Below are positions 27,119 through 45,430 of a stretch of DNA of 64,000 nt, piece after piece. Where the stretch lies: the NCBI GenBank assembly GCA_964234715.1, contig OZ174277.1, one strand, 5' to 3'. Numbering within the stretch: position 1 is the first letter of the stretch; each line of letters opens with the position of its first letter. The notes beneath the pieces were generated by a model. The model was not told the origin of the DNA, ran no database searches, and was given only the letters and a program-made list of their open reading frames with translations. The position numbers were made by a program, and so were the translations under genes. Origin of the DNA: Podarcis melisellensis. Lineage: Eukaryota.

Positions 27119-27397
27119 NNNNNNNNNNNNNNNNNNNNNNNNNNNNNNNNNNNNNNNNNNNNNNNNNNNNNNNNNNNNNNNNNNNNNNNNNNNNNNNNNN
27201 NNNNNNNNNNNNNNNNNNNNNNNNNNNNNNNNNNNNNNNNNNNNNNNNNNNNNNNNNNNNNNNNNNNNNNNNNNNNNNNNNNNNNNNNNNNNNNNNNNNN
27301 NNNNNNNNNNNNNNNNNNNNNNNNNNNNNNNNNNNNNNNNNNNNNNNNNNNNNNNNNNNNNNNNNNNNNNNNNNNNNNNNNNNNNNNNNNNNNNNNN
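27119..27397 (-). other. QKI: N-run (279 nt), inferred to hide the QKI-5 exon 8 acceptor, stop codon and proximal 3'UTR
   Basis: The upstream flank on the minus strand is ACTAAT plus ctcttctctatctttcttt running into the gap. The downstream flank (GTAGTAAAGCAATAAGG...CACTGATCATCTTT) resembles the recalled QKI-5 3'UTR. Confidence 0.8.
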
Positions 27398-27902
27398 AAA
27401 GAAAGATAGAGAAGAGATTAGTTTCAGCTAGTGACGGCTTAATGACAACATGAAAACTAATCACAACTAATAAAAACAAGCATGTTTAATTCTGACATAC
27501 TGCTTGACACCATCTACAGAATGCAATAAAAATCATGACAGCCTTCTATCATGATTTGAACATATGAAGGAGAAGCCCACTCCCACAAAACTGGTTAACG
27601 AGGAAAAATAGAAATAAAATATATCTAATGGTTAGTAGCAGTCGATGAAAGGGGAAAAAAAACAATGAACAGTTTCTGGAACTTGGTAAAAGAATTTAGA
27701 ACAGTCAGTGCACCATATCAGTATCTGACTGCTATTAAGCATTAGTATTCTCCCATGTGCAAGCATCAAAGCAAGTAGTAATGATGAATGTGATTATTAA
27801 AAACTGATTGTTAAAAGAAATGAATCTAAGGAATTTGATTTGTCATGAACAATTTGGTTTCACATAAACTATGGGCCAAACAAGTTTTTTTGTTCAATAT
27901 AT

Positions 27903-27908
27903 TTTATT
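27903..27908 (-). terminator. AATAAA, candidate poly(A) signal for QKI-6/QKI-7 mRNAs
   Basis: AATAAA followed by a GU/U-rich tract (cttgtttggc, tttatgtg), ~0.5 kb before the exon 8 acceptor. Gives UTRs of ~4.8 and ~6.3 kb. Confidence 0.6.
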
Positions 27909-30900
27909 GCTTTTCAATGATTCTATTTACAAACAACATTGAATTTCTTGGCTTCATGATACAAAGCAATACTAAATTGAAGTCTAGAAGTGTAGGCATC
28001 ATCATAGGGACCAGGAAAAGGCCAAATGTTCTAGCCAGCTTTTCCTGCTGAAAATGCTATTTTACACATATAGGACACTAAGAAAATGCACTTGTATGTA
28101 AACACTGTAAAAGTCCTGCCATTTTAAATTCTATACTTAAAATGCTCTAGTTACATCAAAAATAGAGGAAATCTAATTGATACTAATAAGGCATTTTAAA
28201 AACTANNNNNNNNNNNNNNNNNNNNNNNNNNNNNNNNNNNNNNNNNNNNNNNNNNNNNNNNNNNNNNNNNNNNNNNNNNNNNNNNNNNNNNNNNNNNNNN
28301 NNNNNNNNNNNNNNNNNNNNNNNNNNNNNNNNNNNNNCACAAAAATTACAGTAAAACATAAAAAAAGTTCTCAAGTGGAAAGTTATCATTCCCAATGATC
28401 TTGAGCTGTTCCTTCTTTAATGACTCTCTCACATTCTCCTTCAACAACTTGGTCCACTTTACAGTAGTACAAATTTTAAGACTCATTCAACAGCTTTATC
28501 ATCTCTAATAAATTGAGGTTTGAAAAAAATATTTGTACTGTTGCCATTGACTAAAGCAGAGGAGATGGAAGTGAGAAAGGTATTCAGTGCAAAGTCAGAT
28601 TTGTGCCATTTTGTAAAATGAAATTCAGTAGGTGCAATGTTCACAGATAGCACACTATTTAATGACAGACATCATGGGTTGGATTCATCTTCACATGTTA
28701 CATTGTTTCTATGGCCTATCATTTAGGCTACAGTTCATGAACACTAAACATTATTGCTGTAACTTAAATGAGACCTCATGTTCCCTGATTTATTGATTTT
28801 TTTGAAAAAAAAATGATGAGAAGTGGGGTTTAAGCTAAAAATGTTGTCAAAAAATAAAAACAAAAACAAAATTAAAAAATAAATATTTAGTGTGGCACCA
28901 TCTTGCCACCTTAAAATGTATACTAGATATCCGGAATCTTAAAGCATTCTTGGTACTTACTACAATTTTGATTAAAATGGTATTACAAATTTTAGACATA
29001 AATTATGTGACAATTGGCTTTGAAAACATTCAGTTATGGCCTTAGCATTGCCATTTTGTGTGGTTTATAAAATCAATGCAAGCTATCTTAAGATACCAGT
29101 ACACCTGTGATACATCCTCTGCCAAGTCCCTGGCCTTCTACAGTACACACAGGTTTGTCAACTGTGCAACACACACCATTTACAGTTTATTACAATTAGA
29201 TCAGTCAGTCACTCTCGTTACATGAATCAAATTCAGTTTTGTATTATTTATATAGCGGGGCCTTAACCTTGGCAGAAATTAATTAAGTACTGCTGAATTC
29301 TTCCATTCTAAACTTAGAAAAAGAATGCTGACAAATTGTGGGCTCTTGCTTTGAATGCAATGCTTACATGTAAGCCAGCATTAAGAATAACAGCTTGCTT
29401 AATGAGAGAATATAATAGTAGCATACATAATTTGGAAAAAAGTTTAATCATAGACCCAGTGAATGTACATTCTGCCTCTCATCTTCTTGCAGCTTTTCCT
29501 TATGAAGAGAAAGCAATTCGGTTTACTGACATTGTATTTTAACTACCATCAATATTGGACAGGTAATCAAGGTATTATAAATCCACAGCAAGTGTAAATA
29601 AAAAGTGCCCACTAATTTTAGCATAATGGAAATGTTCAAAAAGTGAAATTTCTTTTAACTTAGAAGTTGGTTGTATGGAAGCAGTTAAATAAAATCTAAA
29701 CAAAATACCAATATATGCACACAACAATCGTATTGAGAGAAACAGGTGTAGCACGCAACTCTACTGCAACTTAAAATGAACACAAATACTATATTAGTTT
29801 TATGAAATCTTAAATTACCTACAGTGTTCACTAATTACACTTATTTTTGAATCATATAGCACCATTAGCAAATAAGCACTGAAGGAAAAACGTTAAGGAG
29901 GTCACCTTCATCTCCTTATATTATATACAATAGTAGTTATAACTGAGAAGGCACTTTGGGAGCCCTTGCTACTAAAAGGAATTCCAATTCCAAGACTATA
30001 GTTAATAAAACTAAAAACCTTGATGCTACATCCTCAAGTTACTTGAAGCCAAAATCTGACCAAAAAAACTTACAAAATATTTTCCAACAGCCACATCTAG
30101 TTAGAAGCAAAAGTAAGTGGCTGCCTGTATTAGTACCCAAATGCTCAAACTTTCCAGCTGCAAAAAACAGAAACAAGGACAGTCTGTGGCTGAGTTCAGC
30201 AATACTTTCCACTACCTTTTTTCTTTACCAGCAATTGAGTGTGAAATTATTCCTTCCCACCCTATTCACCAGACAAAGCTGTCCTGCTTCCAGCATCCTT
30301 TCACATCCCTATATATTAATAACACTTTAATAGTGTGCAAGCATGTAAAATCCACATAACTGCATTAAGCAGAATCATGTAATTTACCCCATTCCTCAAA
30401 TATGTGAACCAAGTGAACTGGGTCTATGTGCATTCTTTTTCTTCCCCTGCATGTACACCCTGTTCAAATATTATACTCACATTTGGGCAATCTAACAAAG
30501 ATAGAACTGGAAAGGCACACTATCTGTATGTAATGAGAAAGTAGGGTAGGGGGAAAGATTGTTCAAAAGAAGCTTGTCATAACTAAGTAATGTATTGAGG
30601 GAAACCATATTAATTCTGTTGTAGCATTTTAGAAATGCTCCAGATTATTCAACTACTACTCTGGTTTGGAATGTCTGTAGTAACACTGAGTTGCTTTGGT
30701 ATGAGCCCAAGAACAGGTTAAATGTATGAAAAGGCTCACGGGGTGTTATACGACCTTCTAAGTCTTGCAAGTAGATAAAAGAGCCATTACCTGAATGCTA
30801 TCAAATGTATCAAACCTACAGAAAACTCTCATACCTCAAGCACTGCAATTCAACACTTCCATTCTAGTTTGTATTTCTGAACTGTACAACACACATTAAG

Positions 30901-31878
30901 CCCCACAACACCCCTGTGAGGTAGGGAAGGAGGATTTCTACGGAAACAGGCAGTACTGCTACTTATCAAATCCACAAACCAAGCTGATACTACATGTGGG
31001 ATAAATGCTCCTGAGAATACAGTCACACTACTGCCAGTAGCACACTCAATGTCAATAAACCGAGAGCTCACTTTTCACAGGAGGATTAAACCATTCATGG
31101 GTCCAAGAGTTCGAGGAACATGAATTACATTTCATGTAAAAGGAGAAAATGAAGATTTATTTTCCATCAGTTAGCTAAGCCAAACAGAGTCCAAAAGCAG
31201 TTGTCTTTGCTAACCAGAATGTCAAAATTGTAACAAGTTCAAGAAATAAATTTTAGCATCAAATGATATAACTAAAAATTTATATTTTTTAACAGAAGTG
31301 AAATATTCTTTATCAGCACAAACCCTAACCAACTTCTGATATATCAATTTTACTGTTGTTGTTTGTTTGTTTGTGTTTTTTTGCTAAATTTAGAGACGGG
31401 TTTTGTTCTCAGATATCTGCTCAAGTTACAGTACAGTGGCACAAACCATTTATCAGAAGAGAGGAAACTAAATCTTCAGCTTTCTCCTGTAATAATAAGA
31501 AAGCATTTACTTCTATCTCATTAAGCGCCCATCCATTCATTTTATTTTGCAACACCAATCTGATATCTCCAATTAATAATAGTCACATGGGAGGGTCAAC
31601 TATTAATGCAATACTAAGACTTCAGTCCTGCTTGAATTTAAATCATACATAGTGCTTACAAAAGGAACAAGTTATAGCATTTTATATTGAATACACTGAA
31701 GGTTTTTTTAAAAAAAGAAAAAATCATTTAGATGAAAAGAGTACAGTAGTTAACAATTTTAAACCTCTGGAACAAATATTACTAGCACTTCAATTTAATG
31801 TAAAACATCAATATAATGGTCAAAATAGTATTTGGTTAACCAGCTGTGGTGTTGCAAATTTCATGTACACTCAAAGCA

Positions 31879-32026
31879 NNNNNNNNNNNNNNNNNNNNNN
31901 NNNNNNNNNNNNNNNNNNNNNNNNNNNNNNNNNNNNNNNNNNNNNNNNNNNNNNNNNNNNNNNNNNNNNNNNNNNNNNNNNNNNNNNNNNNNNNNNNNNN
32001 NNNNNNNNNNNNNNNNNNNNNNNNNN
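31879..32026 (-). other. QKI: N-run (148 nt), inferred to hide QKI-5 exon 7 ([25 protein letters not shown])
   Basis: This exon was not found in readable sequence. The gap lies ~0.7 kb past the QKI-6 acceptor where it is expected, and is long enough for a 75-nt exon. The upstream flank reads ...ctgttaatgttttatcaa[N]. Confidence 0.7.
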
Positions 32027-32721
32027 TTGATAAAACATTAACAGCAGGCTTATCAAAATGGATTTAAAATGATCATTTTCTAAAAAAAAAAATTCATTTT
32101 AAGAAAGCAACAAGTTAAGGCACAGTAGTTTCAAATTTTAATCTTAATATATGAAGTATACCTGTGCAGATTAATATTGCATTTATTTTAAACATCCGGG
32201 CCTTAACCTGCATTATCCATTCATTTACAAACTCAAGATTACAGTTTCATGAAATCTACTAGACCCAAGCACATTTGAGCTTTACTAGTCACATATTCAC
32301 TGAAGTGCCTTCCTTGCAGCAGGACTACCTTAAATAATGCCATTTTTAATACTGAAGATTCTTTGCTAATTTTAAAACAACTTCCAGTTTTTACCATTTT
32401 AAAAAGTTTTAAAGCAATTCCTCAAGCCTACAGACTGTGGTTTAAAACTAAGTCAATAACTGTGAACTGCAATGAATTAGGTGATTAGTAAAGCAAATAG
32501 TACAGAATACATAGCAGTCAGTATACTACCATACACTCATAAATCACAGCTAGTTTGTCATAGTACAGGCTATACCAAATTAATAGCATTTTTATTTCTA
32601 TGTGCAAAAAAGTGCAAGTAAGTCACTGACTGCTAGGCTATGTTTTTTCAAGGCTGCTGAAAACTAAGCATTTGTTAAAGTCAGCTCTGACGAGGGTTCA
32701 GTTAAGACCATTCTTGAATTC

Positions 32722-32747
32722 TTAGCCTTTCGTTGGGAAAGCCATAC
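32722..32747 (-). CDS. QKI: QKI-6 terminal exon, coding part: GMAFPTKG*
   Basis: cttttatctttag|GT ATG GCT TTC CCA ACG AAA GGC TAA, identical to the QKI-6 tail. Confidence 0.97.
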
Positions 32748-33421
32748 CTAAAGATAAAAGGAAGGGAATGAAACATTAGTCAACTAAGATTTGATACTAT
32801 TGCCAATCTTCCTTTCCTCTATCACATATTTTTCCTAAATCAATCTTTTCAGAACTTTATATTATCTCAATATGTCACCATTTTACTGCAAATCGCATGT
32901 GGATCTATTATGTGCCACTCAAATCAATGAGGCTAACTTCATTTTTCAACACTGCCATTTTGCATTTTCACCTAGTAGCACTGTATACATTTGTCCCAGA
33001 CCAGGGGCAACTTTCTTTTTCCAATTGTCTCAATGTTGCAGTCAGTTCTTCACATAATCTCTCCAATCACAAACATGGCTCTAATTCTGTGCCCATCCCC
33101 AGCGAGAAAATTGGATGTGTTATGGCATCTACAAAGCTTTGAGTATGGTTGATTACTCTGAATTCACCACATAGGTAAAATTAGTACTTCCACACAATTC
33201 GGGTACTGTAGTTAAATTGAAATAGTCTATGGAGGGGAGGGGTTGAGGTCAGCTAAAAGTAATTCACCTATTTCCATACTATAATACTGTACAATGCTTT
33301 ATCTTTTACTATAGACTGCAATTATTATGATTACCAATAGTCTGCTCCCCAAAACTAAGCTAATAATGGATTATGGATTAGGCTAGATTATTGCCTATGG
33401 AACTGCTACATTTATAATTTG

Positions 33422-33552
33422 TTATGCATGACTTCCAGTAATCCATACCACAGAAGTGTTAGGATTGGATGAAGTCATGTAAAGAGATTTGCTACCGGTG
33501 ACAGAATGTGGGGCTAAACTACTAATATTGCTCCTGAAAAGACGGTCTGCAT
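33422..33552 (-). CDS. QKI: Candidate additional QKI terminal exon: DADRLFRSNISSLAPHSVTGSKSLYMTSSNPNTSVVWITGSHA*
   Basis: CACTAAC (33600-33606), long pyrimidine tract, then tttcag|AT. Open for 43 codons in the phase required by the exon 6 donor. Confidence 0.5.
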
Positions 33553-34181
33553 CTGAAATAAAAAAGACTTGCAAAGGAAGAGAAATGAATATAGGAAAAG
33601 TTAGTGTACCAATGGCCCCAAAGCACCACATTGTAGATGTCATTAATTCAAAATCAGGGCTAAGATAAAAGGCAAAGCACTGTGAAGAGCTGAATTGGTT
33701 CTACAAAAGTAGTAACAAACAATGAAAAGCAACAACTTGAGTGCTTAATGTTCTCTTCCTATGACCAAGAAGATGTGAGCTTGTGCATACAGACACACAA
33801 GGTCTATTCTTCTGTAAACGAGCACTACTTTCAACATAGTAACTGTTTAGATATGAACCAGCCAAAGTTAAGCACTTATAAGTCTCATTGATTCCAACAC
33901 AAGTGTTTAACAGGGATTTAAATAGAGATTCAAATCAAACAGACTTAAAATGTGCATAACTTTGGCTGGATTATGTTCTTAGAATGTGAAAAACATTATT
34001 GCTGACCCAAATTTAACAACCAAAGTCCCATAAATCAACAAGATCAGCAATGCCAAGGCCATACATATTTCACACAAAAATATAGGCAGAAAAATATATT
34101 CAAAATTATGGGAAGGACACAAACTGCCCTGCAATGCCTGCATTGACCATTTCTTAATTAATTGCTGCTATAGTCTGGCCT

Positions 34182-34237
34182 TCATCCAGCAAATGAACAG
34201 ACCAAAGTATCAGGAATGTGAGACATTTCAATCTCCT
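34182..34237 (-). CDS. QKI: QKI-7-type terminal exon, coding part: EEIEMSHIPDTLVCSFAG*
   Basis: Acceptor cctccttttttacag|AG, phase 1. E-x-I-E-M-x-x-x-P-D aligns with mammalian QKI-7 EWIEMPVMPDISAH. It is the first terminal exon after exon 6. Confidence 0.85.
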
Positions 34238-35126
34238 CTGTAAAAAAGGAGGCAGTAATGTATTAAATTGCAACTTCTTTTAAGTTATGTTCTCACCTAA
34301 CTTCAGTGATTTTAATTACTTTAAAATTGGTGGCACAGAAAAAAGAGATACATATTTTTCCGAGTCCCTAGAAAAGCAGGACAAGTTATTTTACTTGCAC
34401 CTCTGGGGCAGCCCATTTAATATTAACCTGTGGTTTCCCACCCTCCTCTGCGCCCAGTTTCAAAAATGAGACTGTGCCTTTTTCAATAATTAGAGATATG
34501 CAGCACAGGCTGTGTCAGAGAATTCTAAAATATCCTTCAACCCTCTCTTTCAGTATATATCTAAACTTTTTCACATTTCAGTGTGCCTTGTTACTTCCAA
34601 CTCTAAAATTCTATAATTCTATCTTGTATGCCTCCATCTAGCAACTTCTGAAGCCAATTTGGTGCCAAACACATTGCTGTGCTTTCCTTTGGACCACAGC
34701 AGCAAGGTAGAGTGTGGGGCTTGTCATTTGGGCAGACCAGGACCTCCATACACCCTGTCCAGGCTTGTGCCCCAGAAAGGTCACCTTGGTACTGCTAATG
34801 CAGCAAAAACAACGTGGGAGGCAGTAGTTACGAGTTACTCTGTGATTCTCCAGAGGTTTGACTTCATCTCTGGAGGCGCACTCCATTGTCTCTTGGGACA
34901 GATGGATGCCAACTATCTTTTCCAACTAAATCTAGTTGTTTGTAAGAAAGAGTTGAACTATGTTTAAACTGATATTTTCAAAATCTGAAAAGGGGACATG
35001 GTGAAACGAAACAGATGCCAATGAAAAATTCACCAAGTTGCCCAATATGCTCTGATAACATCATCAGCGGCGAGTTCTATAGCAAAAGGGTACTTGTACA
35101 ATATAGTATGTTTCCTCATACTATAT

Positions 35127-35194
35127 TTATCTTAGTATAAGAAACTCACCACCTGATAAATTAATATTCAAATAATTATCTAGGAAGAACTTAC
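35127..35194 (-). CDS. QKI: Read-through tail past the exon 6 donor (QKI-7B-like): [22 protein letters not shown]
   Basis: The ORF continues through the donor to TAA. It starts GKFF, as recalled for human QKI-7B. Expression is not shown by sequence. Confidence 0.5.
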
Positions 35195-35491
35195 CTAATA
35201 CACCACTGGGTTCAATAGGATACTCAAGAATTGATGTAGCAGGAGCCAGTGTGTAGGGATACTCATACGGTGTGTAAATTAAACCAGCTTCAGGTCCTGG
35301 GGGAACTATTGCAGCAGTTGGGTGAGGAGTTCCATTTGGCATGACAGCGGTCTGTATTTGTCTGATCAAAGGCATTAAGGTAGGGCCACCTGGCGTAGGG
35401 GTACGCAGGGCAGCTGGTGGGAGAACAGGCGCAGGCCCCGTAATAATCCTTGGAGCCTGGGCTGTTGCTGCAAGAGAAAAGGCAAGGGCTG
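35195..35491 (-). CDS. QKI: QKI exon 6 (297 nt): (P)[31 protein letters not shown]...[27 protein letters not shown]
   Basis: Lies within ORF 35127..35504. Acceptor ttactgtag|CAGCC, donor TTA G|gtaagt. Phase 1 at both ends, compatible with exon 5. Confidence 0.98.
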
Positions 35492-36244
35492 CTACAGTAA
35501 GCAAAGAAATTTAGAAGAAAGTATGGAGACAGCAGTGCAAAACATGGAAAGATGAGAAAGTAGGAAAATAGGAAAGAAGAAAAATAAAAGGAAATCATTA
35601 GTACATGCATTGATCACACAGTGGCAAAGCACACCATTCAAAAGCAAACAGCTTTTCATTTCCCAGTGTGATTAAGTATGAACATGCAAAACAAAAGCCA
35701 ATTTAAAATGGTAGAGGAGATTTCTAAAACAGGTTACACAGCACAAAAGCTCAATTTAGACCACATATTTTTTCATTACCTATGCCTTCAAGACTGCATG
35801 AGACTGAGAGGCATGCAGGAAACAAAGAAAATACTGTTGTAATTGCATATGGAATATTTTAAAAAGTGAGATTACAGAGTCCACAGAACTTCAGTTAAGC
35901 TTAGATATCATACAATGTAACATGTTTAAATTGCAACTCATCATAAAAACATTCTATTTAGTATACAAACATCAGCATTTATAACATTTATCTACTTTCA
36001 GCATCAACACTTTTGCCTTTCTGGTATAGTTAGCTACAAAAAAAATCTCTCTTACTCTATTTTTCTTAAATGCCAGAATGAACGCTAGAAAAATAGACTC
36101 CGGTAGTATTTAAAAAAACAAGTAAGTTAAGATGTGTAAATGTGCTGTTAATACATAATGCTGTCACTGGTTTTAAAATCAATTAGTGTTTAAGCGTAGC
36201 TTTACTGATTCATCAAACATAATGTCCAGTGATTAAGTATTGTT

Positions 36245-36462
36245 AATCAGATTTAGACTACAATTCACTTTTTGGAGAGCCTTTTGGACCTGGTAACAAC
36301 ATGCTTCTGAGAGGCTGCAGTTTAAAAGCACTCTCAAATTGGTGCAGAATGCTGCTGCTAAAATCTTAATAGGGCAAAGTGCTCTATGAACAGGTGACTT
36401 CATTATTGTATCAGCTGCACTGGCTTGTACTGGTTTTCAAATGCAATTCAAGGAGCTGGTTT
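36245..36462 (+). mobile_element. Decayed L2 LINE fragment
   Basis: Remnants of RLDY, KLVQNAAA, LHWL and QFK.LV motifs shared with the 37795-38402 copy. Confidence 0.7.
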
Positions 36463-37794
36463 TTACCAATAAAGTTCAAAGTAACTTGAAATCAAGTTAT
36501 TCTTGTATGAATCTGTCCATCTGTTAAGATCAGCTGTTGCTTTTGTCTTGTATGTGTAGGTAACCAACACATAAGAGAGCTTTTTCTGTGGTGGTGCCTC
36601 CTTGTCCCAAGAGGTTACGTTACCTTCCTCTTTCTTGTCCACCAGCACATAAACACTTGCTTTTTAAAATCTGCTTTTGATTCTGTTGCTGCTCAATGTA
36701 TTGTCAATGAGACTCTTAGTGTTTTTGCTGTTTTTAGTTTTGTTAATTTATGTTTTAGTGATTGTATTTAATGCTTTTGTGTTTGCTCTTCATTTGTAAG
36801 CAGCTTTAAGTGACTCCTTTGTGGAAGGGGAATGGGTATAAATCTTTTAAATAAATAAAAGTTAGGAAAGGACCAATGAAAAATACCCAACTATTTGCTC
36901 ATGTCATGGAAGAGTGACCTGAAATTCAGTCTGCTAAGAGCACAGGAGAGCATATTTAGGACAGAAGTGGCAGGTTACTGTTCCTGGTTCGACTTTTCTA
37001 ATAAAACAGTCATGTGATAGTAAAAAAATCTGTTAAGTGGGGGAAGCTCTTTGCTTTTCTCTCAGACCTTGAACCTTTAGTGTTAGTACACAATTCCCAA
37101 AACATCCCATTTTTTAGTATGGAAAACCTAAGTTTGGTTAGAAAAGACAGGAACAGCCTTGACTCAGCAGAATATTTAGACTGAAATCCTGTGTCTGCTT
37201 ACTTGGGAGTAAGTCATTGATACATCAAAATAGTTATCTTGGATTTAGGTTTTAAATTTCCCTTTCTAACTCTTTAGAACACAGCAGCTACAGATTGGAT
37301 GGGTAGTAACTGAACTCATTAGCACCTTCTTGGCTTTAGTTGCTCACATCCTAGGTCACAATACAAGAAACAGTAGTACCACAAAACTAAACTCTAAAAT
37401 TGTCAAGTTCCATGGTCAGTTTCCCAGTACCACATATGCAATATACCTTGCAAATATCACCTCAGAGATTCAGAGAAAGATGTACAAATTTTTTTTTTAT
37501 CTTGTATCAACGTTTTAAAAGTTTCTTATGCTTAATCTTTTGTATGGAGGAACAATTAAAACAAGCTGCAGATGCCAGTGCAAATCAGAATGTGAGAAAC
37601 TAAAGTGCAGCAGATTCATCTGGAAGGACCATGTAGAACCCTCACTCAGTGGACAAATCCTCTGTGAGAAAGAGTGATCCACAATAACCTAGCCAAAGTC
37701 ATCATGTATGTTGACTGGGCTCACTAAGTGAGGGCCAGTATAATTTGACCAGACTGACAGCATAATTGACCAGACTGAGAGAACTACCGTATTT

Positions 37795-38402
37795 TTCTGG
37801 ACTGAGGCCGTTTAGGGCTTTAAAGGTCAGCACCAACACTTTGAATTGTGCTCGGAAACATACTGGGAGCCAATGTAGGTCTTTCAAGACCGGTGTTATA
37901 TGGTCTCGGCGGCCGCTTCCAGTCACCAGTCTAGCTGCCGCATTCTGGATTAGTTGTAGTTTCCGAGTCACCTTCAAAGGTAGCCCCACGTAGAGTGCAT
38001 TGCAGTAGTCCAAGCGGGAGATAACCAGAGCATGCACCACTCTGGCGAGACAGTCCACAGGCAGATAGAGTCTCAGCCTACGTACCAGATGGAGCTGGTA
38101 AACAGCTGCCCTGGACACAGATTTGACCTGTGCCTCCATGGACAGCTGTGAGTCCAAAATGACTCCCAGGCTGCGCACCTGGTCCTTCAGGGGCACAGTT
38201 ACCCCATTCAGGACCAGGGAATCCTCCACACCTGCCAGCCTCCTGTCCCCCAGAAACAGTACTTCTGTCTTGTCAGGATTCAACCTCAATCTGTTAGCCG
38301 CCATCCATCCTCCAACCGCCTCCAGACACTCACACAGGACCTTCACTGCCCTCACTGGTTCTGATTTAAAAGAGAGGTAGAGCTGGGTATCATCTGCATT
38401 CA
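37795..38402 (-). mobile_element. L2-clade LINE reverse transcriptase C-terminal fragment, 5'-truncated, frame still open
   Basis: ORF 37702..38418: ADDTQLY, NRLRLNPDKTE, SRLDYCNALY, QNAAARL, HITPVL..LHWLP, FKVLVLTFKAL. Confidence 0.93.
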
Positions 38403-38735
38403 TGTAGCAAAGTCCCAATTATAATTTTTTCTTTTACTTGAAGATGAGAGAGATCAGAAACTTGAACTTGAATGAAAGAAACCAAGCTTTAGGGTCCAGT
38501 AGGCAGAAGTATAAGCCATTGTTGAACAATGAAGCTTTGTATTATTAGATGTTTATGTGTTTGTTTTACAATGTTTTTGCCAACAGGGGTATTTAAAAAA
38601 TCCATTGAGACATGAGCTAGGCAGCCATGCCACTCTGCACACAGATTCTGCTGTCGTTGTCTCCCCATGTATCTGAATGAGGGAACACATCCTGTGGCAT
38701 TGAATAGGATTGACACATGCAACCAATTCAAGTAA

Positions 38736-39086
38736 GGGATGAAGGTGGTGCTGTGGTCTAAACCACTGAGCCTAGGGCTTGCCAATCAGAAGGTCGGCGG
38801 TTCGGAATACCCATGATGGGTAAGCTCCCATTACTCGGCCCCTGCTCCTGCCCACCTAGCAGTTTGAAAGCACATCAAAGTGCAAGTAGATAAATAGGTA
38901 CTGCTCCAGTGGGAAGGTAAACGGCATTTCCGTGTGCTGCTCTGGTTCGCTAGAAGCGGCTTAGTCATGCTGGCCACATGACCCAGAAGCTGTATGCCGG
39001 CTCCCTCGGCCAGTAAAGCGAGATGAGCGTCACAACCCCAGAGTCGGTCATGACTGGACCTAACGGTCAGGGGTACTTTTACCTTT
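38736..39086 (+). mobile_element. Sauria SINE, older subfamily
   Basis: Head, body and acctttacc tail. TSD accaattcaagta / accaatacaagta (1 mismatch). Confidence 0.92.
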
Positions 39087-39500
39087 ACCAATACAAGTAT
39101 GAATGAAGCCTGGCCAGATCATAAGGAATGTATGCTACTTATGACCCAGCTGGGCCTATGAAAAGTGAGAGCTTGAAACATGCTCACCTGACTTCTGATC
39201 ATTCACAGCAAGAAGTTACCTAATAATGAAAGGAAAGCCCTAAAGAGAATTCTTAAGTTGTAATTCTGAGAGAATTATCATGGTGTTATTTAGAGAACCA
39301 AATAACCAGGCCTTGCTAGGCTAGACTAAATTGGTTCAAAGTTAGGTGCCACGGTCAACCGAAGCCTGTAAAAAATATATGACTAGATGGGAGTTTACAA
39401 GAGCTATCCTGCTGTTGTTGTTTTAATTCCATTCACTTCTGTTAAGAGGACCTACCTCAGATGCAGGACTGATCTTGTTATAGTTAGTTTATATACTAGA

Positions 39501-39632
39501 CAAGGGCTAGGAAACCTGTTGCCCTCCAGACATTGCAAGACTACAGTTCCCATGACCATTGCCCATGCTGGCTAGAGATGTTGGGAGCTTGAGTCTAGCA
39601 ACATTTGGAGGGTTATGTGTTCCCCTTCCCTG
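39501..39632. mobile_element. Decayed palindromic hAT-like MITE
   Basis: ccctccagacatt...gactacagttccca / tgggagcttgagtc...catttggaggg; resembles 19330-19465. Confidence 0.6.
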
Positions 39633-40639
39633 TGCTAGGCATACTGGTATGAAACAGTAAATAGGATAAGAACAGATTAGCTACAGTGCTGTTGGGGTGT
39701 CTCTAAATCTGTATCTATATCTATATTCATATCTAAATTACCCTATGCTAGAACCAACCAGACAACAAAGTTTGCCTTTACTAAAAAAACATTAACACCT
39801 GCATCAATTTTATACAATACCTCTCGTTTAAGGGTGCCTGGTCTGAATTTTATCCTTGTGGCCAGTTGCCAGAATGGAACCATGAAAAGTAGGGGGGGGG
39901 CAGTAAAATACAGCTGAATCATTCTTGTTGTTAGTCATATATGTATGCTGTTACAGCACATACTTGCTTTTTAAAACACCACACGGTAGTGGTGGCTGCA
40001 TTTGTAGTACAGTTGGGCATGTGCATGCTGTGAAGCAAATGCAAACACACAAACACTGTGCTCACTCATAGTGAAGGAATAGGCCCTAGGGTGACTGGCA
40101 CAACTATGAAAACATGTAGCAGCCTAATGAATTATGACACTGGTTCATCTACCCTAGTATTGTTTACTTTAACAGCCTAGGCAGGTCAGACTCGAAGATC
40201 AGCCTGGTAAATTAGCCCCAAAGTTGGTAGTCTACAAAATGTTTGATAGCCTGCTTTTTACTCATAAGAAGGGCTAGCAGAGAAAGGCCTATTTTGCGAG
40301 CCTACTTAGTTCCTATAGAAGAGAATGGAAGAGAAGCCTCTCCTCTGTGGAGAAGGGAAAATTTGCTCTCTACTCTTAAACTGGGTGGCCCAGGTTCAAA
40401 CTATCTAGACTCATGTCAGCCTTGTTTTAGCACTGAAAAGCCAAGTACACTCTAATGACCTCTATTTGAAGAGAGACAGAGCGGTGTAACTCTGCTGGTC
40501 TCCTTGAACTCTCCATTGTTTTTTATGCCATGATCCATGGTGTGCTTCTGGAATGATGCAGGGAGGTGAAAGTTACAAGGCACTGTATTACAATGGCTCT
40601 GCTCCAACCAAAAAGTAGCACTAGGACACGGTTGCTCAG

Positions 40640-41295
40640 CCAATGGCTTTTGAACTGTGGGACCTGCAAGGTACCACTCTGTCTCCAACATTATCCAGCA
40701 GCTATATGAAATCATCCAGAACTGTCATGTGGGGATTTTGATCATGATGTCCTCAGCATGCTGATACCATGCAGATCTTTGTCTTCCACCTGAATCAGCA
40801 GACACTGTGCAGGTGTTGGATTAGTGCTTGAAGCAGTGACGGGCTAATAAACTGAGATTGAATTCTAACCAAACAGAAGTACTGTGGCTGGGTAGTACCC
40901 GTGTCCAGGAATTATTAGAAAGACAACCTTTTTTGTGGGGGGAGGATGGCTGCACTCCACATGAAGGAACATGTTTACACTCTGGGAATATTGCTGGATT
41001 CCAACCTGTCAATGGAGTCCAAAGTGGCTTCTGTGGCTAGAAGTGATTGTGCCCAGCTTAGGCTGGTTTGCCTGCTATAGATGTTCCAGGACTGGGAAAA
41101 TCTGGCCTCAGTTGTCTATTCTCTAGTGACATCCTGCCTAGACTACTGTAATGTGCTCATTGAGTGGGGCAACCCAACAGGACCATGTATTACTGGTCCT
41201 AAAAGCACCACACGGGCTGCAAGTATGCTTCTTTGCCCAATTCAAAGTGTTGTTACTAGCATACAAAGCCCTCAAAACCCTGGGACCTAAGTTCC
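40640..41295 (+). mobile_element. Decayed L2 RT fragment
   Basis: Frameshifted ANKLRLN..TEVL, LVTSCLDYCN and AQFKVLLLAYKAL motifs. Confidence 0.8.
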
Positions 41296-41654
41296 TTAAC
41301 CCCTGGGAGCTTACCCCTCAGTATCAACTTTATTGTACTGCTGCCCTGGATTTTGGGAGGAAGAGCGGGCTAGAAATAAAAATAAAAAAAGAAATGTGGC
41401 AGTGTAGCACATTTAGGGTCACTGCTATCCTAAAGAAGGCAGACAGATTGAAGGAAATTAGATTCTGGAAAAAACCTGGGTAAACAAGGAAGAGCTCCCT
41501 TAACCAAGGAAATGCATTCTGCATATGCTCAGAGGCACGTAACACTATGTGTCAAATATTTGGTAGAGAAAAAAGATGCTAACCCTACCTTTAGTTAAGA
41601 GTAACTCCCTACACGCCACAGTACAGACCCTCAAATTATATGAACATATGAATA

Positions 41655-41785
41655 AAGCTACCTTATTTAGTCAGAACACTGATCTATCTAGCTTAGTATT
41701 GTCTATACTGACTTAAAGCAACTCTCCTGGTTTCAGACAGGAGTCTTTTCTAGCCCTACCCAGAGGTGCCTGGGAATAAATCAGA
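41655..41785 (-). mobile_element. Squam3-like SINE relic
   Basis: aagctaccttat..agtcaga...ctatctagcttagtattgtctatactgac body. Confidence 0.6.
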
Positions 41786-43320
41786 CTTTACTGAAAACAT
41801 CAACATAATATTGCTTGCACATTTCCACTATATCTAGAACTACAGCAGCTAGAACCTCCCATCACCACCACTACATCCACTTAAAGAAAGCAAATAATCC
41901 AGGGAATGCTAATGTTCCAAGCAAGCTTCAAGATACACGCCTAAAATGTAAGAAAAATTCAGCTACTGGGAAATCTACCTGTAAGACACTCCACAAAAAT
42001 CACTGAAAATCAGCTGAGTTTTAATTGGATTGCAAGGTCCCATATGCATCAATTGGACTTGTAGGTTTTAACCAATACATATTTACTTAGAAATTACTCC
42101 CAAGTATAGACAGGATTTCAGTTTTAAGTTCTTTTAACCAATTTAAGCACAGTTTAAACATATACAGATGATATCAAGAGACAATAGAACAGCAGGAAGA
42201 TATTTTTTTGTTAACATTTCACCTCTTTTCAATGAAAGCAGTTAACCTTAATGCATGCATCTGGAGCCTTCAACACACTGATCAAAGCCTAAGAATAATT
42301 TTAGGTCCCCTTAACACACAAGAAATCCATTTTTTTCTGGACAAGCTCTGTGTTAAAGCTAACAGAATGAGCTAACTTAGTTGCATTATGTAAGTCTCTG
42401 TTGGGTTTGTTATGCGAGACTGTGGTTCATTAAATGAAAGAAGGCAGTGACAGGAAAAATTATTGCCCATATCAATTAGTGATTAGGCTGACTACTCTTA
42501 CCCTCAAAGTGCAATGATTTGCCCGTTAATTATGTTTCAAACATGACTGAAATCTAACCCAATTAGTTCAAGACATTTAGTTTTAAGATAACCTTGAATA
42601 TGCAGTTTCTGAAAACATGCTGAATGAAACCAAGAACCATTGCAAAAAATATATGACTGAACTCATAGCTGAAGAGTTGAAAAAAGGGAAAACATGCCAA
42701 TAATTACACAGAAAACACTAACTATATATTAAATATCTTCAAAACATTTGTTTTATTTTTAAACTGGTCCTTCTTGGAACTAAGAGAGGGTAGCTTATTC
42801 AGTGGGTTTTTCCTACAGCACTGGCATATATACCCTTCCTTGCAGGTGCCAATTCTTTTGCCAGCAACCATACAATCAGCCTCTGCTCACATGGCTAGAT
42901 CTAAGTTAACCCCAGTCATGCAGAAGCCCTTCTAAGAAAAGTGGGTCTTACACAGCTAGATCAATATTTAAAGATACTCTTAAGGAGAGTTAAGATGTGA
43001 AAGAAATGTGCCTAATCCCAATCCTCTCAGCAGCATGCTTTGCTCACTTTGTATGATGCCATGACATTATAAGTACAGCAGTGTCATATTACTAAACAAA
43101 CAGAGTGTGCACATTCTGGAAAAGCAAGATAGGGCATGTGAAGCACATTCATGAGATGTTTTCTGTGTAGGAGTCAAGATTATGGAAATGGCAAGATCTA
43201 TAAGGGGTCAGTGGGCTACATATGTAACACAGGCAATATTTTGTCTTCCAATCTAGTGCGAACAAACACAACTTAAAAGCATCCTCCCATATAAAACCCC
43301 CACATTTCTGTTGTACTTAC

Positions 43321-43408
43321 GTGATTTGATATTGGCGTCTCTGTAGGTGCCATTGAGAATTGCAAGTTCCATCAACTGCATCTTTTTAAGGCTATCTTCT
43401 CCTTCTGC
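43321..43408 (-). CDS. QKI: QKI exon 5 (88 nt, QUA2 region): [29 protein letters not shown](P)
   Basis: Manual translation of the reverse complement: tttgttcag|GCA GAA GGA...AAA TCA C|gtaagt. Phase 0 in, phase 1 out. Not present in the ORF track. Confidence 0.98.
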
Positions 43409-45430
43409 CTGAACAAATAAAGTAGACTATTAGTAGAGTATTTTACAGTATCAATGCGCTTGCAAAAGCTTATCACATTTCAATATATGAAGTGGAAACA
43501 TGTTTGCAAAATAGAGAAACTCCCTCAGATGCTACTCTACCTACATGAGGTCCCTATTTTTTCAGTCCTAAATCTAAAACACTACTCTCCTTGGACTTCC
43601 TCCTACATTCTAAGAACACTGGAAGGAAGCCAATATTCATAACTTCTAAACAGCACTGAGCTTTTTAGAAGGACAGCATAGCAGAATTGGAGGCTGTTCT
43701 CTTTCACACAACATTTTGGATACCATAGACTTTATCAAACAGAACTGCATGAAAGGCACAAATGCAGAGCTATAGGCGGTCTGCAACGGAAAACTTTATT
43801 AACAGCTTTGCATGAAACATGGTTGTATAGTGGAAGCTGCACATGAGGCTATCTTGGGCTTCCATCAAGTCTTATAAAGTAAGTATCTCTTTAAATCCCA
43901 AAAGAAAAATAACAATTGGCAGTTGCAAGCAGTTACAGAGTTATTGACGGTAGATTGGGGAAACCATTTAGATATTGTTTCTGCCAGGGACATCTGCAGA
44001 CAACATATTTCCAAAGTTACTATCCATGCACACAAATGCTGTTTTCCATCTGGATTCAAAGTCCATAGTTCAGTTGCTAAAACTTTAACAGACACAATTT
44101 CTACAATTACAGCAGTCTTGTGCTGACAGATCACAAAGCTACAAATAGCAAGGTGTTTAATTCTGTATTTGGATTTATTTTGCAGCTTTAATGGATAGTA
44201 AGTATAAACTTATGAAAGATAATCTTATGTACTGGAAATGCAGCAAATACTGCAACACCCCCACCTTCCACTTCTATCTTGTCAGAAGGTGGGGTTGCCT
44301 ATATCACCTGATAATTTTGCTTCTACCATGGCTGTGGATATTGTATCATTTTGAAATGATACTTACCCATATATTTGGTTTACAAAACTCTCTCTATAAA
44401 CGTGGCTGCATGGCCCACAATGTAGTTTTTGTTTATTATGCCATTGTTTAAAATTAGCTGGTGTTTTTTCATTAATGTTCAAGGACAATAATAATTGTTC
44501 CACAGTCTTTTCTTTTCAAATCCTGAAAATTGTATAATTCTTTTTTGTGATCCAGAAACACAAGTTAAAACAATTTATGGTGTAAAAGCACACCACAATT
44601 TTTTAATTGTTTTCTTTGGCCAATACCTCTCCTCTCAATTTACTAAAAAGCATGTTTCCAATGTCAGAAATTTCAGTAAGCATTCTACTTCAAAGAGGGT
44701 GAAACTGAGGGTGCAAAAGGGAGATGAAGAATCTTCAACGGAAATCAGACTACATGTAAGTCTGTATCAATGAATAAAGTACCGTAATTTATACTGCTAA
44801 GGTGCTGCTGTAAGTAGACTTCTGGAAAGTCTGACAAAGCATGGTTTTTATTAGTTTAATATAGTTGGCAAACCTTTTATTGTCTAACTAGCTTTTCTTC
44901 TCTAACACACTAAACACTCACATAATTGAAATGTTTAGTGTTCTTGTTAATAATTGGAGGGGGCGGGCAAAGAAATTGTTGAATTCTAGTCTCTAGTAAC
45001 ATTGAAAACCATATTATATGCTGTTAAGATTTTGCGCTGAATTTTCTGATACTTTTTACTATGCTATAAATGTTAGATAAAAGCTAGGTGTTACNNNNNN
45101 NNNNNNNNNNNNNNNNNNNNNNNNNNNNNNNNNNNNNNNNNNNNNNNNNNNNNNNNNNNNNNNNNNNNNNNNNNNNNNNNNNNNNNNNNNNNNNNNNNNN
45201 NNNNNNNNNNNNNNNNNNNNNNNNNNNNNNNNNNTTTATATATATTTCATACAGTAAAACCTAGTTGAAATCATTTTTGAATTTCACATGCAAGTATGGG
45301 AGAATTCCATGTAAGAGATTTTTTTCCACCAGGCAAGAGTAAGAATCTTGAGCACATAAAAGTGATTAATCACAAGCTAATCACCCACAGTTGCCCAGCA
45401 CAAATAACAACAATCAAACAGCTTCCATAT

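What the first reader, a model, noticed from the sequence alone, without database searches (positions are those of the whole stretch)
27417..43435. Most QKI acceptors carry QKI's own binding motif at the likely branch point: a possible autoregulatory branch-point code
Seen (minus strand): TACTAAT before exon 5 (43429-43435), TACTAAT before exon 6 (35597-35603), CACTAAC before the candidate exon (33600-33606), GACTAAT before the QKI-6 exon (core 32775-32780) and AACTAAT before inferred exon 8 (core 27417-27422). The QKI-7 acceptor and the visible flank of inferred exon 7 have only weak tttaat/gttaat. Known: ACUAAY is the QKI response element core and the SF1 branch-point motif, and vertebrate branch points are usually more degenerate. 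QKI-SF1 competition and QKI autoregulation are established in mammals. Inference: nuclear QKI level could tune 5 of 7 acceptors and shift terminal-exon choice toward the two that lack the motif.
Basis: partly seen in the sequence, partly recalled or inferred. Interest (0 to 1): 0.72.

Follow-up and report, generated by a model that had tools for sequence, protein, structure and literature searches.

The report
Conserved consensus branch points in QKI
In this lizard's QKI gene, four real splice acceptors sit behind a perfect ACUAAU branch-point motif, which is also QKI's own binding core; three of the motifs are kept from bony fish to lizards, so they are almost certainly real branch points, but whether QKI uses them to control its own splicing is untested.

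Summary
All five motifs are at the stated coordinates on the minus strand. Four lie at supported acceptors:
- Exon 5: branch A at -22.
- Exon 6: -107, inside a 161-nt AG-free tract.
- QKI-6 exon: -29.
- Exon 8: motif visible, acceptor masked.

The fifth sits before a "candidate exon" whose motif and AGs are absent in Gekko, so it is probably chance.

Chance expects 0.17 hits in the five branch zones (P about 3e-5). Against literature branch-point base rates of 5-20%, P is 3e-5 to 7e-3.

In orthologous loci, ACTAAY is kept before exon 6 (8 of 9 sequences), the QKI-6 exon (5 of 5, at -29/-30) and exon 8 (4 of 4). The exon 5 motif is lineage-specific.

Exon 7 lies under a mask. Four of five orthologs carry TCTAAY there, so "exon 7 lacks the motif" is untestable here and misleading.

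None of the conserved cores has a conserved UAAY half-site.

Verdict: these are real, deeply conserved, SF1-optimal branch points. Autoregulation by QKI-SF1 competition is plausible, apparently undescribed and testable, but unproven.

The parts
43429..43435 (-). TACTAAT, likely branch point of the exon 5 acceptor (branch A 43430, -22). Lineage-specific.
   Evidence: Absent before exon 5 in sturgeon, arowana, eel and ide; catfish has CTCTAAT at -33.
43321..43408 (-). QKI exon 5 (88 nt, AEGEDSLKK...ANIKS).
   Evidence: The translation is 97-100% identical to the exon next to exon 6 in the five fish loci.
35597..35603 (-). TACTAAT, distant branch point candidate for exon 6 (branch A 35598, -107).
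   Evidence: ACTAAY lies inside the AG-free zone in 8 of 9 sequences. CTAA is the only invariant 4-mer around it in alignment A2.
35604..35609 (-). TGCATG (RBFOX-type motif), one base upstream of the exon 6 branch motif.
   Evidence: GCATG is kept in lizard, Gekko, L011, arowana, L007-L009 and ide; it is absent in sturgeon and catfish.
35492..35596 (-). AG-free, CU-rich tract between the distant branch motif and the exon 6 acceptor. The whole AG-free zone is 161 nt.
   Evidence: AG-free zones of 78-241 nt are kept in orthologs.
35195..35491 (-). QKI exon 6 (297 nt), with an in-frame alternative acceptor at 35467.
   Evidence: (hits named QKI/quaking, E down to 5e-51). The sturgeon and arowana gene models use the downstream acceptor.
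34182..34237 (-). QKI-7-like tail exon (EEIEMSHIPDTLVCSFAG, then stop). Its acceptor has only TTTAAT at -26.
   Evidence: No counterpart was found in Gekko or the fish loci, so the exon itself is unverified.
33600..33606 (-). CACTAAC before the 'candidate exon'. Probably a chance occurrence.
   Evidence: The motif and both candidate AGs are not conserved in Gekko.
32775..32781 (-). GACTAAT, branch point of the QKI-6 terminal exon acceptor (branch A 32776, -29).
   Evidence: ACTAAT sits at -29/-30 in all five sequences compared.
32722..32747 (-). Coding part of the QKI-6 exon (G-MAFPTKG-stop).
   Evidence: The Sphaerodactylus model P0007 ends GMAFPTKG.
31879..32026 (-). Mask that holds exon 7 (QKI-5 NLS exon) and its branch zone, by synteny. 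Letters not read.
   Evidence: Gekko exon 7 lies inside the collinear 153-nt interval.
27417..27423 (-). AACTAAT, likely distant branch point of the exon 8 acceptor. The acceptor is under the mask.
   Evidence: The same heptamer and flanks occur in Gekko (-53), arowana (-89), eel (-93) and catfish (-81), each about 10 nt after the last AG.
27119..27397 (-). Mask that holds the exon 8 acceptor and the start of exon 8, by synteny. Letters not read.

Best explanation
The ACUAAU heptamers before exon 5, exon 6, the QKI-6 terminal exon and exon 8 are the working branch-point sequences of those acceptors. They are near-perfect matches to the SF1/U2 consensus UACUAAC.

Two of them (exons 6 and 8) are distant branch points. 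They lie at the 5' edge of long AG-free polypyrimidine tracts, an architecture typical of regulated exons.

Shown here: position, rank as best U2-type match, placement beyond chance, and conservation over the bony-fish to squamate distance for three of the four.

Inferred: these acceptors depend strongly on SF1. Because the same hexamer is the QKI core, they are exposed to nuclear QKI-5.
For: - Motifs and distances.
- Best heptamer in each AG-free zone.
- Placement: 0.17 hits expected in five zones, 4 seen, P about 3e-5. Against assumed branch-point base rates of 0.05 / 0.1 / 0.2, P(at least 4 of 5) is 3e-5 / 5e-4 / 7e-3.
- Base rates come from two sources. CUAAU is associated with 9.1% of the human exons for which a motif was predicted (PMC4315302). 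[quoted passage not shown]
- Conservation: exon 6 in 8 of 9 sequences, at distances from -68 to -171 and always inside the AG-free zone. QKI-6 exon in 5 of 5 at -29/-30. Exon 8 in 4 of 4 orthologs plus the window.
- Branch points lie near the 5' end of AG exclusion zones, and such exons tend to be regulated (PMC1431707).
Against: - No lariat data exist here, so no branch point is mapped.
- Exon 6 also has a proximal candidate: TTCTAAA at -20 in the window, and TTCTAAT at -21 in L007-L009.
- In ide the exon 6 zone holds TTCTAAC, not ACTAAC.
- The exon 8 and QKI-6 motifs lie inside broadly conserved blocks, so their conservation is not specific to the hexamer.
- The exon 8 acceptor is masked in the window.
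- The base rates are human and rough; no lizard genome-wide rate could be computed.
Confidence: 0.72

Rival explanations
1. Autoregulatory branch-point competition, in general form. Nuclear QKI-5 binds at least one of these conserved ACUAAU branch points in its own pre-mRNA, displaces SF1, and so tunes the QKI-5 : QKI-6/-7 ratio. The most likely site is the exon 8 acceptor, which in relatives is bracketed by a second AACUAAC core 13 nt into the exon.
For: - QKI-SF1 competition at ACUAA branch sites is demonstrated for RAI14 and NUMB (PMC13004596; PMC9786888).
- QKI controls its own 3'-end splicing. Loss of QKI shifts output to qkI-5, and 24 QREs were counted in the 3' region (PMC5548867).
- The mechanism is stated to be undetermined (PMC9786888).
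- Four of five visible branch zones hold the core, far above base rates, and the full ACUAAY is kept over deep time.
- A second conserved core overlaps the QKI-5 stop codon in four orthologs. This fits reported repression of QKI-5 through its coding region.
- Blocking exon 8 when QKI is high would match the shift towards qkI-5 seen in the knockout.
Against: - No conserved UAAY half-site lies within 26 nt of any conserved core, and RAI14 repression needed both elements.
- The QKI-6 acceptor carries the core, yet QKI promotes QKI-6.
- Exons 5 and 6 are shared coding exons, and repressing them would not give known isoforms.
- No CLIP data could be examined here.
Confidence: 0.35
2. One reading: QKI represses the five motif-bearing acceptors and thereby shifts terminal-exon choice to the two that lack the motif (QKI-7 and exon 7).
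For: The QKI-7-like acceptor in the window has only TTTAAT. QKI-5 promotes the QKI-7 exon in human cells (PMC5548867). Exon 7 in relatives has U, not A, before CUAAY.
Against: - One of the five is not an exon.
- Exon 7's branch zone is masked, and relatives carry a strong CUAAY there.
- The QKI-7-like exon is unverified outside this lizard.
- QKI-6 is promoted, not repressed, by QKI in mouse.
- Choosing exon 7 still requires the motif-bearing exon 8 acceptor to make QKI-5.
Confidence: 0.08
3. Chance. ACTAAY is a common AT-rich hexamer in AT-rich introns, and its nearness to acceptors is coincidental.
For: Motif density is below the shuffle expectation (60 vs 85), and 38 copies lie on the sense strand. 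The candidate-exon copy is best explained this way. The exon 5 copy is not conserved in fish.
Against: The chance of at least 4 hits in five short zones is about 3e-5. Three sites are kept across lineages, at changing distances for exon 6.
Confidence: 0.03

Closest known systems
QKI-SF1 competition at ACUAA branch sites (RAI14 exon 11, NUMB exon 12; PMC13004596, Zong 2014 as cited in PMC9786888)
   Same: The same hexamer sits at a branch-point position upstream of alternatively used exons, and the same two STAR proteins could read it.
   Different: RAI14 has two tandem ACUAAC elements that form a bipartite high-affinity site. Here the cores are single and have no conserved half-site. The target would be QKI's own pre-mRNA, which those papers do not discuss (no mention of QKI's own branch points).
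QKI autogenous and cross-isoform regulation (Fagg 2017, PMC5695090; Darbelli 2017, PMC5548867)
   Same: The same gene region (exon 6 to exon 8) is involved. QKI motifs in the introns and UTRs of its own transcript are known, and QKI level changes isoform output.
   Different: [quoted passage not shown] None assigns the QREs to branch points, and the reported directions do not fit simple branch-point repression.
Distant-branch-point exons with long AG exclusion zones (Gooding 2006, PMC1431707), such as PTBP1 exon 11
   Same: Exon 6 (AG-free 161 nt) and exon 8 in relatives (63-103 nt) have a consensus branch sequence at the 5' edge of a long pyrimidine-rich AG-free tract.
   Different: The branch sequence is UACUAAU rather than the vertebrate-typical UACUGAC, and it coincides with the gene product's own binding core.
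RBFOX blocking of SF1 at a branch point next to UGCAUG (CALCA exon 4; Zhou and Lou 2008, recalled from memory, not checked here)
   Same: UGCAUG lies 1-2 nt upstream of the exon 6 distal branch motif in most lineages.
   Different: No evidence that exon 6 is RBFOX-regulated. This is a lead only.

Membership tests
U2-type branch-point sequence | Match to yUnAy / UACUAAC with a branch adenosine | tested here: met
   In exons 5, 6 and QKI-6 the motif is the top-scoring heptamer in the AG-free zone.
U2-type branch-point sequence | Lies upstream of the acceptor with no usable AG in between, and is followed by a pyrimidine tract | tested here: met
   Before exon 5, one AG lies 2-3 nt after the branch A, too close to serve as an acceptor. 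Exon 8 was tested in orthologs only.
U2-type branch-point sequence | Lariat formed at this adenosine | not testable with these tools
   No RNA data available.
Bipartite QKI response element (ACUAAY-N1-20-UAAY) | ACUAAY core | tested here: met
Bipartite QKI response element (ACUAAY-N1-20-UAAY) | [quoted passage not shown] | tested here: not met
   There is no UAAY within 26 nt of any core in the window. The only one within 20 nt is beside the catfish exon 6 core; eel has one 23 nt upstream of its exon 8 core. Scattered YAAY sites are not conserved in position.
QKI/SF1 competition-regulated acceptor | ACUAA at the branch site | tested here: met
QKI/SF1 competition-regulated acceptor | QKI occupancy and opposite responses to QKI and SF1 depletion | not testable with these tools
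   No CLIP or expression data; the supplements of PMC5695090 are not held. Published mouse directions are mixed.
Distant-branch-point exon (AG exclusion zone of 100 nt or more) | AG-free zone of at least 100 nt with a consensus branch sequence near its 5' end | tested here: met
   Exon 6 has 161 nt in the window and 78-241 nt in orthologs. For exon 8, one ortholog (eel, 103 nt) reaches 100 nt and three do not (63, 91 and 99 nt).

The most novel reading that the evidence does not exclude
The unexplained QKI-5-dependent switch between QKI-5 and QKI-6/-7 mRNAs works through branch-point competition on QKI's own transcript. Conserved ACUAAU branch points make the exon 8 acceptor (and perhaps the QKI-6 and exon 6 acceptors) depend on SF1 and sense QKI. 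In relatives the exon 8 3' splice site is bracketed by two conserved cores: AACUAAU upstream, and AACUAAC over the QKI-5 stop codon. A QKI dimer could clamp both. This would be a feedback device more than 400 million years old.
Probability: 0.25. Interest if true: 0.72.

Novelty: new member of a known kind. Interest (0 to 1): 0.55.

Why it matters
QKI isoform balance governs myelination, muscle and vascular differentiation. [quoted passage not shown]

Placing conserved QKI cores exactly at the branch points of three acceptors in the alternatively spliced 3' end yields a short list of nucleotides to mutate. It also links self-regulation to a competition mechanism already proven on other genes.

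If QKI does not act there, the result still matters in a smaller way. It shows an unusual run of yeast-like and distant branch points kept since the fish-tetrapod ancestor, which predicts strong SF1 dependence of this gene.

Tried and rejected
- Whole-window motif density is not enriched: 60 against 85 expected. Sense-strand bias is only modest: 20 vs 7 in 27-45 kb, and not significant gene-wide. The signal is positional, not a matter of density.
- The candidate exon was rejected as an exon by alignment with Gekko.
- I looked for the QKI-7-like tail in Gekko and the fish loci by peptide pattern and DNA pattern and found nothing.
- I tried to find exons 3 and 4 in the 10 kb upstream of exon 5 in the fish loci, to ask whether all QKI acceptors share the motif. 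No conserved ORF segments turned up, so exons 2-4 remain untested. In the window they are masked or outside it.
- The Sarcophilus hit (L002) is an intronless retrocopy and was not used.
- Two proteins had no contig on record.
- The CLIP tables of PMC5695090 are not held.
- Mammal-type assemblies P0002, P0003, P0005 and P0006 were deliberately not fetched, because they could be human. Their ORF starts (MISFYFS; HVLMVSF) fit the same motif context in a mammal, but that is only a hint.
- No contig that I took for human was saved or compared.
- The spliced QKI model was searched exon by exon only (exon 6 by reference). The joined protein was not built or searched.
- N-runs were not filled. Exon 7 and exon 8 positions were inferred from other species, and only motif positions in those species are reported.
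Full report
**What the window holds.** The minus strand carries the 3' half of a QKI (quaking) gene.
- Exon 6, translated by reference, matches proteins named QKI/quaking with E-values down to 5e-51.
- Exon 5 and the QKI-6 tail (MAFPTKG) read directly from the sequence.
- Earlier notes of this scan call the genome a lizard. Non-coding flanks are 77-97% identical to Gekko kuhli, which fits a squamate.
- Exon coordinates, first to last base on the minus strand: exon 5 is 43408-43321; exon 6 is 35491-35195, with an in-frame alternative acceptor at 35467; a QKI-7-like tail exon starts at 34237; the QKI-6 exon starts at 32747.

**The N-runs.** The scan's program asked that continuity be tested first.
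- The window is collinear with Gekko locus L001 across every run. The run lengths agree: 153 vs 153 nt around 31879-32026, 132 vs 132 nt for 28206-28337, and 279/273 and 332/330 for two others.
- They are therefore true-length masks with continuous flanks.
- By synteny, 31879-32026 holds exon 7, the QKI-5 exon encoding the nuclear localisation signal (Gekko L001 13906-13979). The run 27119-27397 holds the exon 8 acceptor.
- I did not fill the masks. For exons 7 and 8 I report only motif positions in other species.

**The observation.**
- Branch-A distances are -22 (exon 5), -107 (exon 6), -29 (QKI-6 exon) and -34/-49 (candidate exon).
- Before exon 8, AACTAAT is followed by 19 visible AG-free pyrimidine-rich bases and then the mask.
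- The exon 6 motif is far from the acceptor but inside a 161-nt AG-free, CU-rich zone, and it is the best U2-type heptamer in that zone. The same is true of the exon 5 and QKI-6 motifs. This is the distant-branch-point architecture described by Gooding et al. (PMC1431707).

**Is it more than chance?**
- Motif density is not raised: 60 copies against 85 expected from shuffles, with only a modest sense-strand bias.
- Position is what stands out. At the sense-strand density of one per 1,649 nt, the five visible branch zones should hold 0.17 copies. They hold four, P about 3e-5.
- The fairer null is that branch points resemble this motif anyway. Mercer et al. associate CUAAU with 9.1% of the human exons for which a motif was predicted. 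[quoted passage not shown]
- With per-acceptor rates of 0.05, 0.1 and 0.2, four of five has P = 3e-5, 5e-4 and 7e-3.
- These base rates are human and rough. A lizard genome-wide rate could not be computed here.

**Comparison with other species.** I looked up partial QKI models found with exon 6 and read the surrounding DNA. The loci were:
- Gekko kuhli (L001), sturgeon (L003), arowana (L004), a moray eel (L005), a catfish quaking-B (L006) and ide (L010).
- Short unnamed assemblies (L007-L009, L011). Their exon 6 differs from the mammal type, so they are not human.

Results by acceptor:
- *Exon 6.* ACTAAY lies inside the AG-free zone in 8 of 9 sequences, at -68 to -171. Ide has TTCTAAC instead. 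In alignment A2, CTAA is the only invariant 4-mer near the site.
- *QKI-6 exon.* ACTAAT sits at -29/-30 in 5 of 5, inside a conserved acceptor block.
- *Exon 8.* AACTAAT occurs in all four orthologs at -53 to -93, each about 10 nt after the last AG, with flanks nearly identical to the window's visible flank.
- *Exon 5.* There is no ACTAAY in five fish, so this one is lineage-specific or chance.
- *Exon 7.* TCTAAY sits at -28 to -37 in four of five orthologs, never ACTAAY.
- *Candidate exon.* The motif and both AGs are absent in Gekko.
- *QKI-7-like exon.* No counterpart was found.

"5 of 7" becomes four supported acceptors with the core. One further acceptor (exon 7) has a hidden branch zone here, which in relatives holds a strong CUAAY without the leading A. 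One acceptor (QKI-7-like) lacks the motif, but the exon itself is unverified. One pseudo-exon drops out.

**Mechanism.**
- Firmest reading (about 0.7): these are the real branch points, near-ideal for SF1 and U2, and two of them are distant ones.
- Whether QKI uses them is open.
- In favour: competition of QKI with SF1 at ACUAA branch sites is proven on other genes. QKI controls its own 3'-end splicing, and many QREs were counted there. A review states that the mechanism is undetermined. None of the papers I read places the QREs at QKI's own branch points.
- Against: no conserved UAAY half-site lies within 26 nt of any conserved core, whereas RAI14 repression needed both elements. QKI promotes QKI-6, whose acceptor bears the core. 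[quoted passage not shown]
- A general form centred on exon 8 is plausible (about 0.35). It would fit the knockout shift to qkI-5.
- In four orthologs a second core, AACTAAC, overlaps the QKI-5 Asn-stop codons 13 nt into exon 8. This matches reported repression of QKI-5 through its coding region. That stretch is masked in the window.

**Limits.**
- There is no RNA, CLIP or lariat data.
- No bird, turtle, frog or named mammal was compared.
- Exons 2-4 are untested.
- Mammal-type assemblies were not fetched because they might be human. No contig that I took for human was used.
- The joined spliced protein was not built or searched. Exon 6 was searched alone, by reference.

**Verdict.** It is unproven, and its stated direction conflicts with mouse data.

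Noticed in passing
window 35604-35609 (minus strand); also L001, L004, L007-L011: TGCATG, the RBFOX-type motif, lies one base upstream of the exon 6 distal branch motif. GCATG is kept in lizard, Gekko, L011, arowana, L007-L009 and ide, but not in sturgeon or catfish. Together with the CU-rich AG-free tract of about 100 nt, and an exon of 297 nt that would stay in frame if skipped, this hints that exon 6 use could be regulated by RBFOX or PTB.
   Followed up: partly
L001 18231, L004, L005, L006 (13 nt into exon 8); masked in the window (27119-27397): In four other species the QKI-5 stop codon lies inside AACTAAC (Asn-stop). The exon 8 3' splice site is therefore bracketed by two QKI cores.
   Followed up: partly
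orthologs of the window mask 31879-32026 (L001, L004, L005, L006): The exon 7 acceptor carries TCTAAY at -28 to -37 in four species. This is a strong U2-type branch site that consistently lacks the leading A of the QKI core. Ide shows none within 70 nt.
   Followed up: partly
window 34182-34237 (minus strand): The QKI-7-like tail exon has no detectable counterpart in Gekko kuhli or the fish loci, by blastn, peptide pattern or DNA pattern. Its status as a real exon rests on five residues of similarity to the mammalian tail as I recall it.
   Followed up: partly
window 35467 (minus strand): An in-frame alternative acceptor lies 24 nt inside exon 6 and would remove ALAFSLAA. The sturgeon and arowana gene models use it.
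   Followed up: no
window 28206-28337: A 132-nt masked block lies inside intron 7, about 800 nt upstream of the exon 8 mask, and is exactly collinear with Gekko. Its nature is unknown; it could be a conserved intronic element or an unannotated exon.
   Followed up: no
L002 10001-10450: The Sarcophilus 'QKI-like' protein is encoded by a single intronless ORF spanning exons 5-8 of QKI-5, so it is a processed retrocopy.
   Followed up: no
L003 16305-23299: In the sturgeon contig an RBFOX-like gene (RRM_1 plus Fox-1_C) lies about 3 kb downstream of the QKI fragment, on the opposite strand. The record is flagged UNVERIFIED_CONTAM.
   Followed up: no
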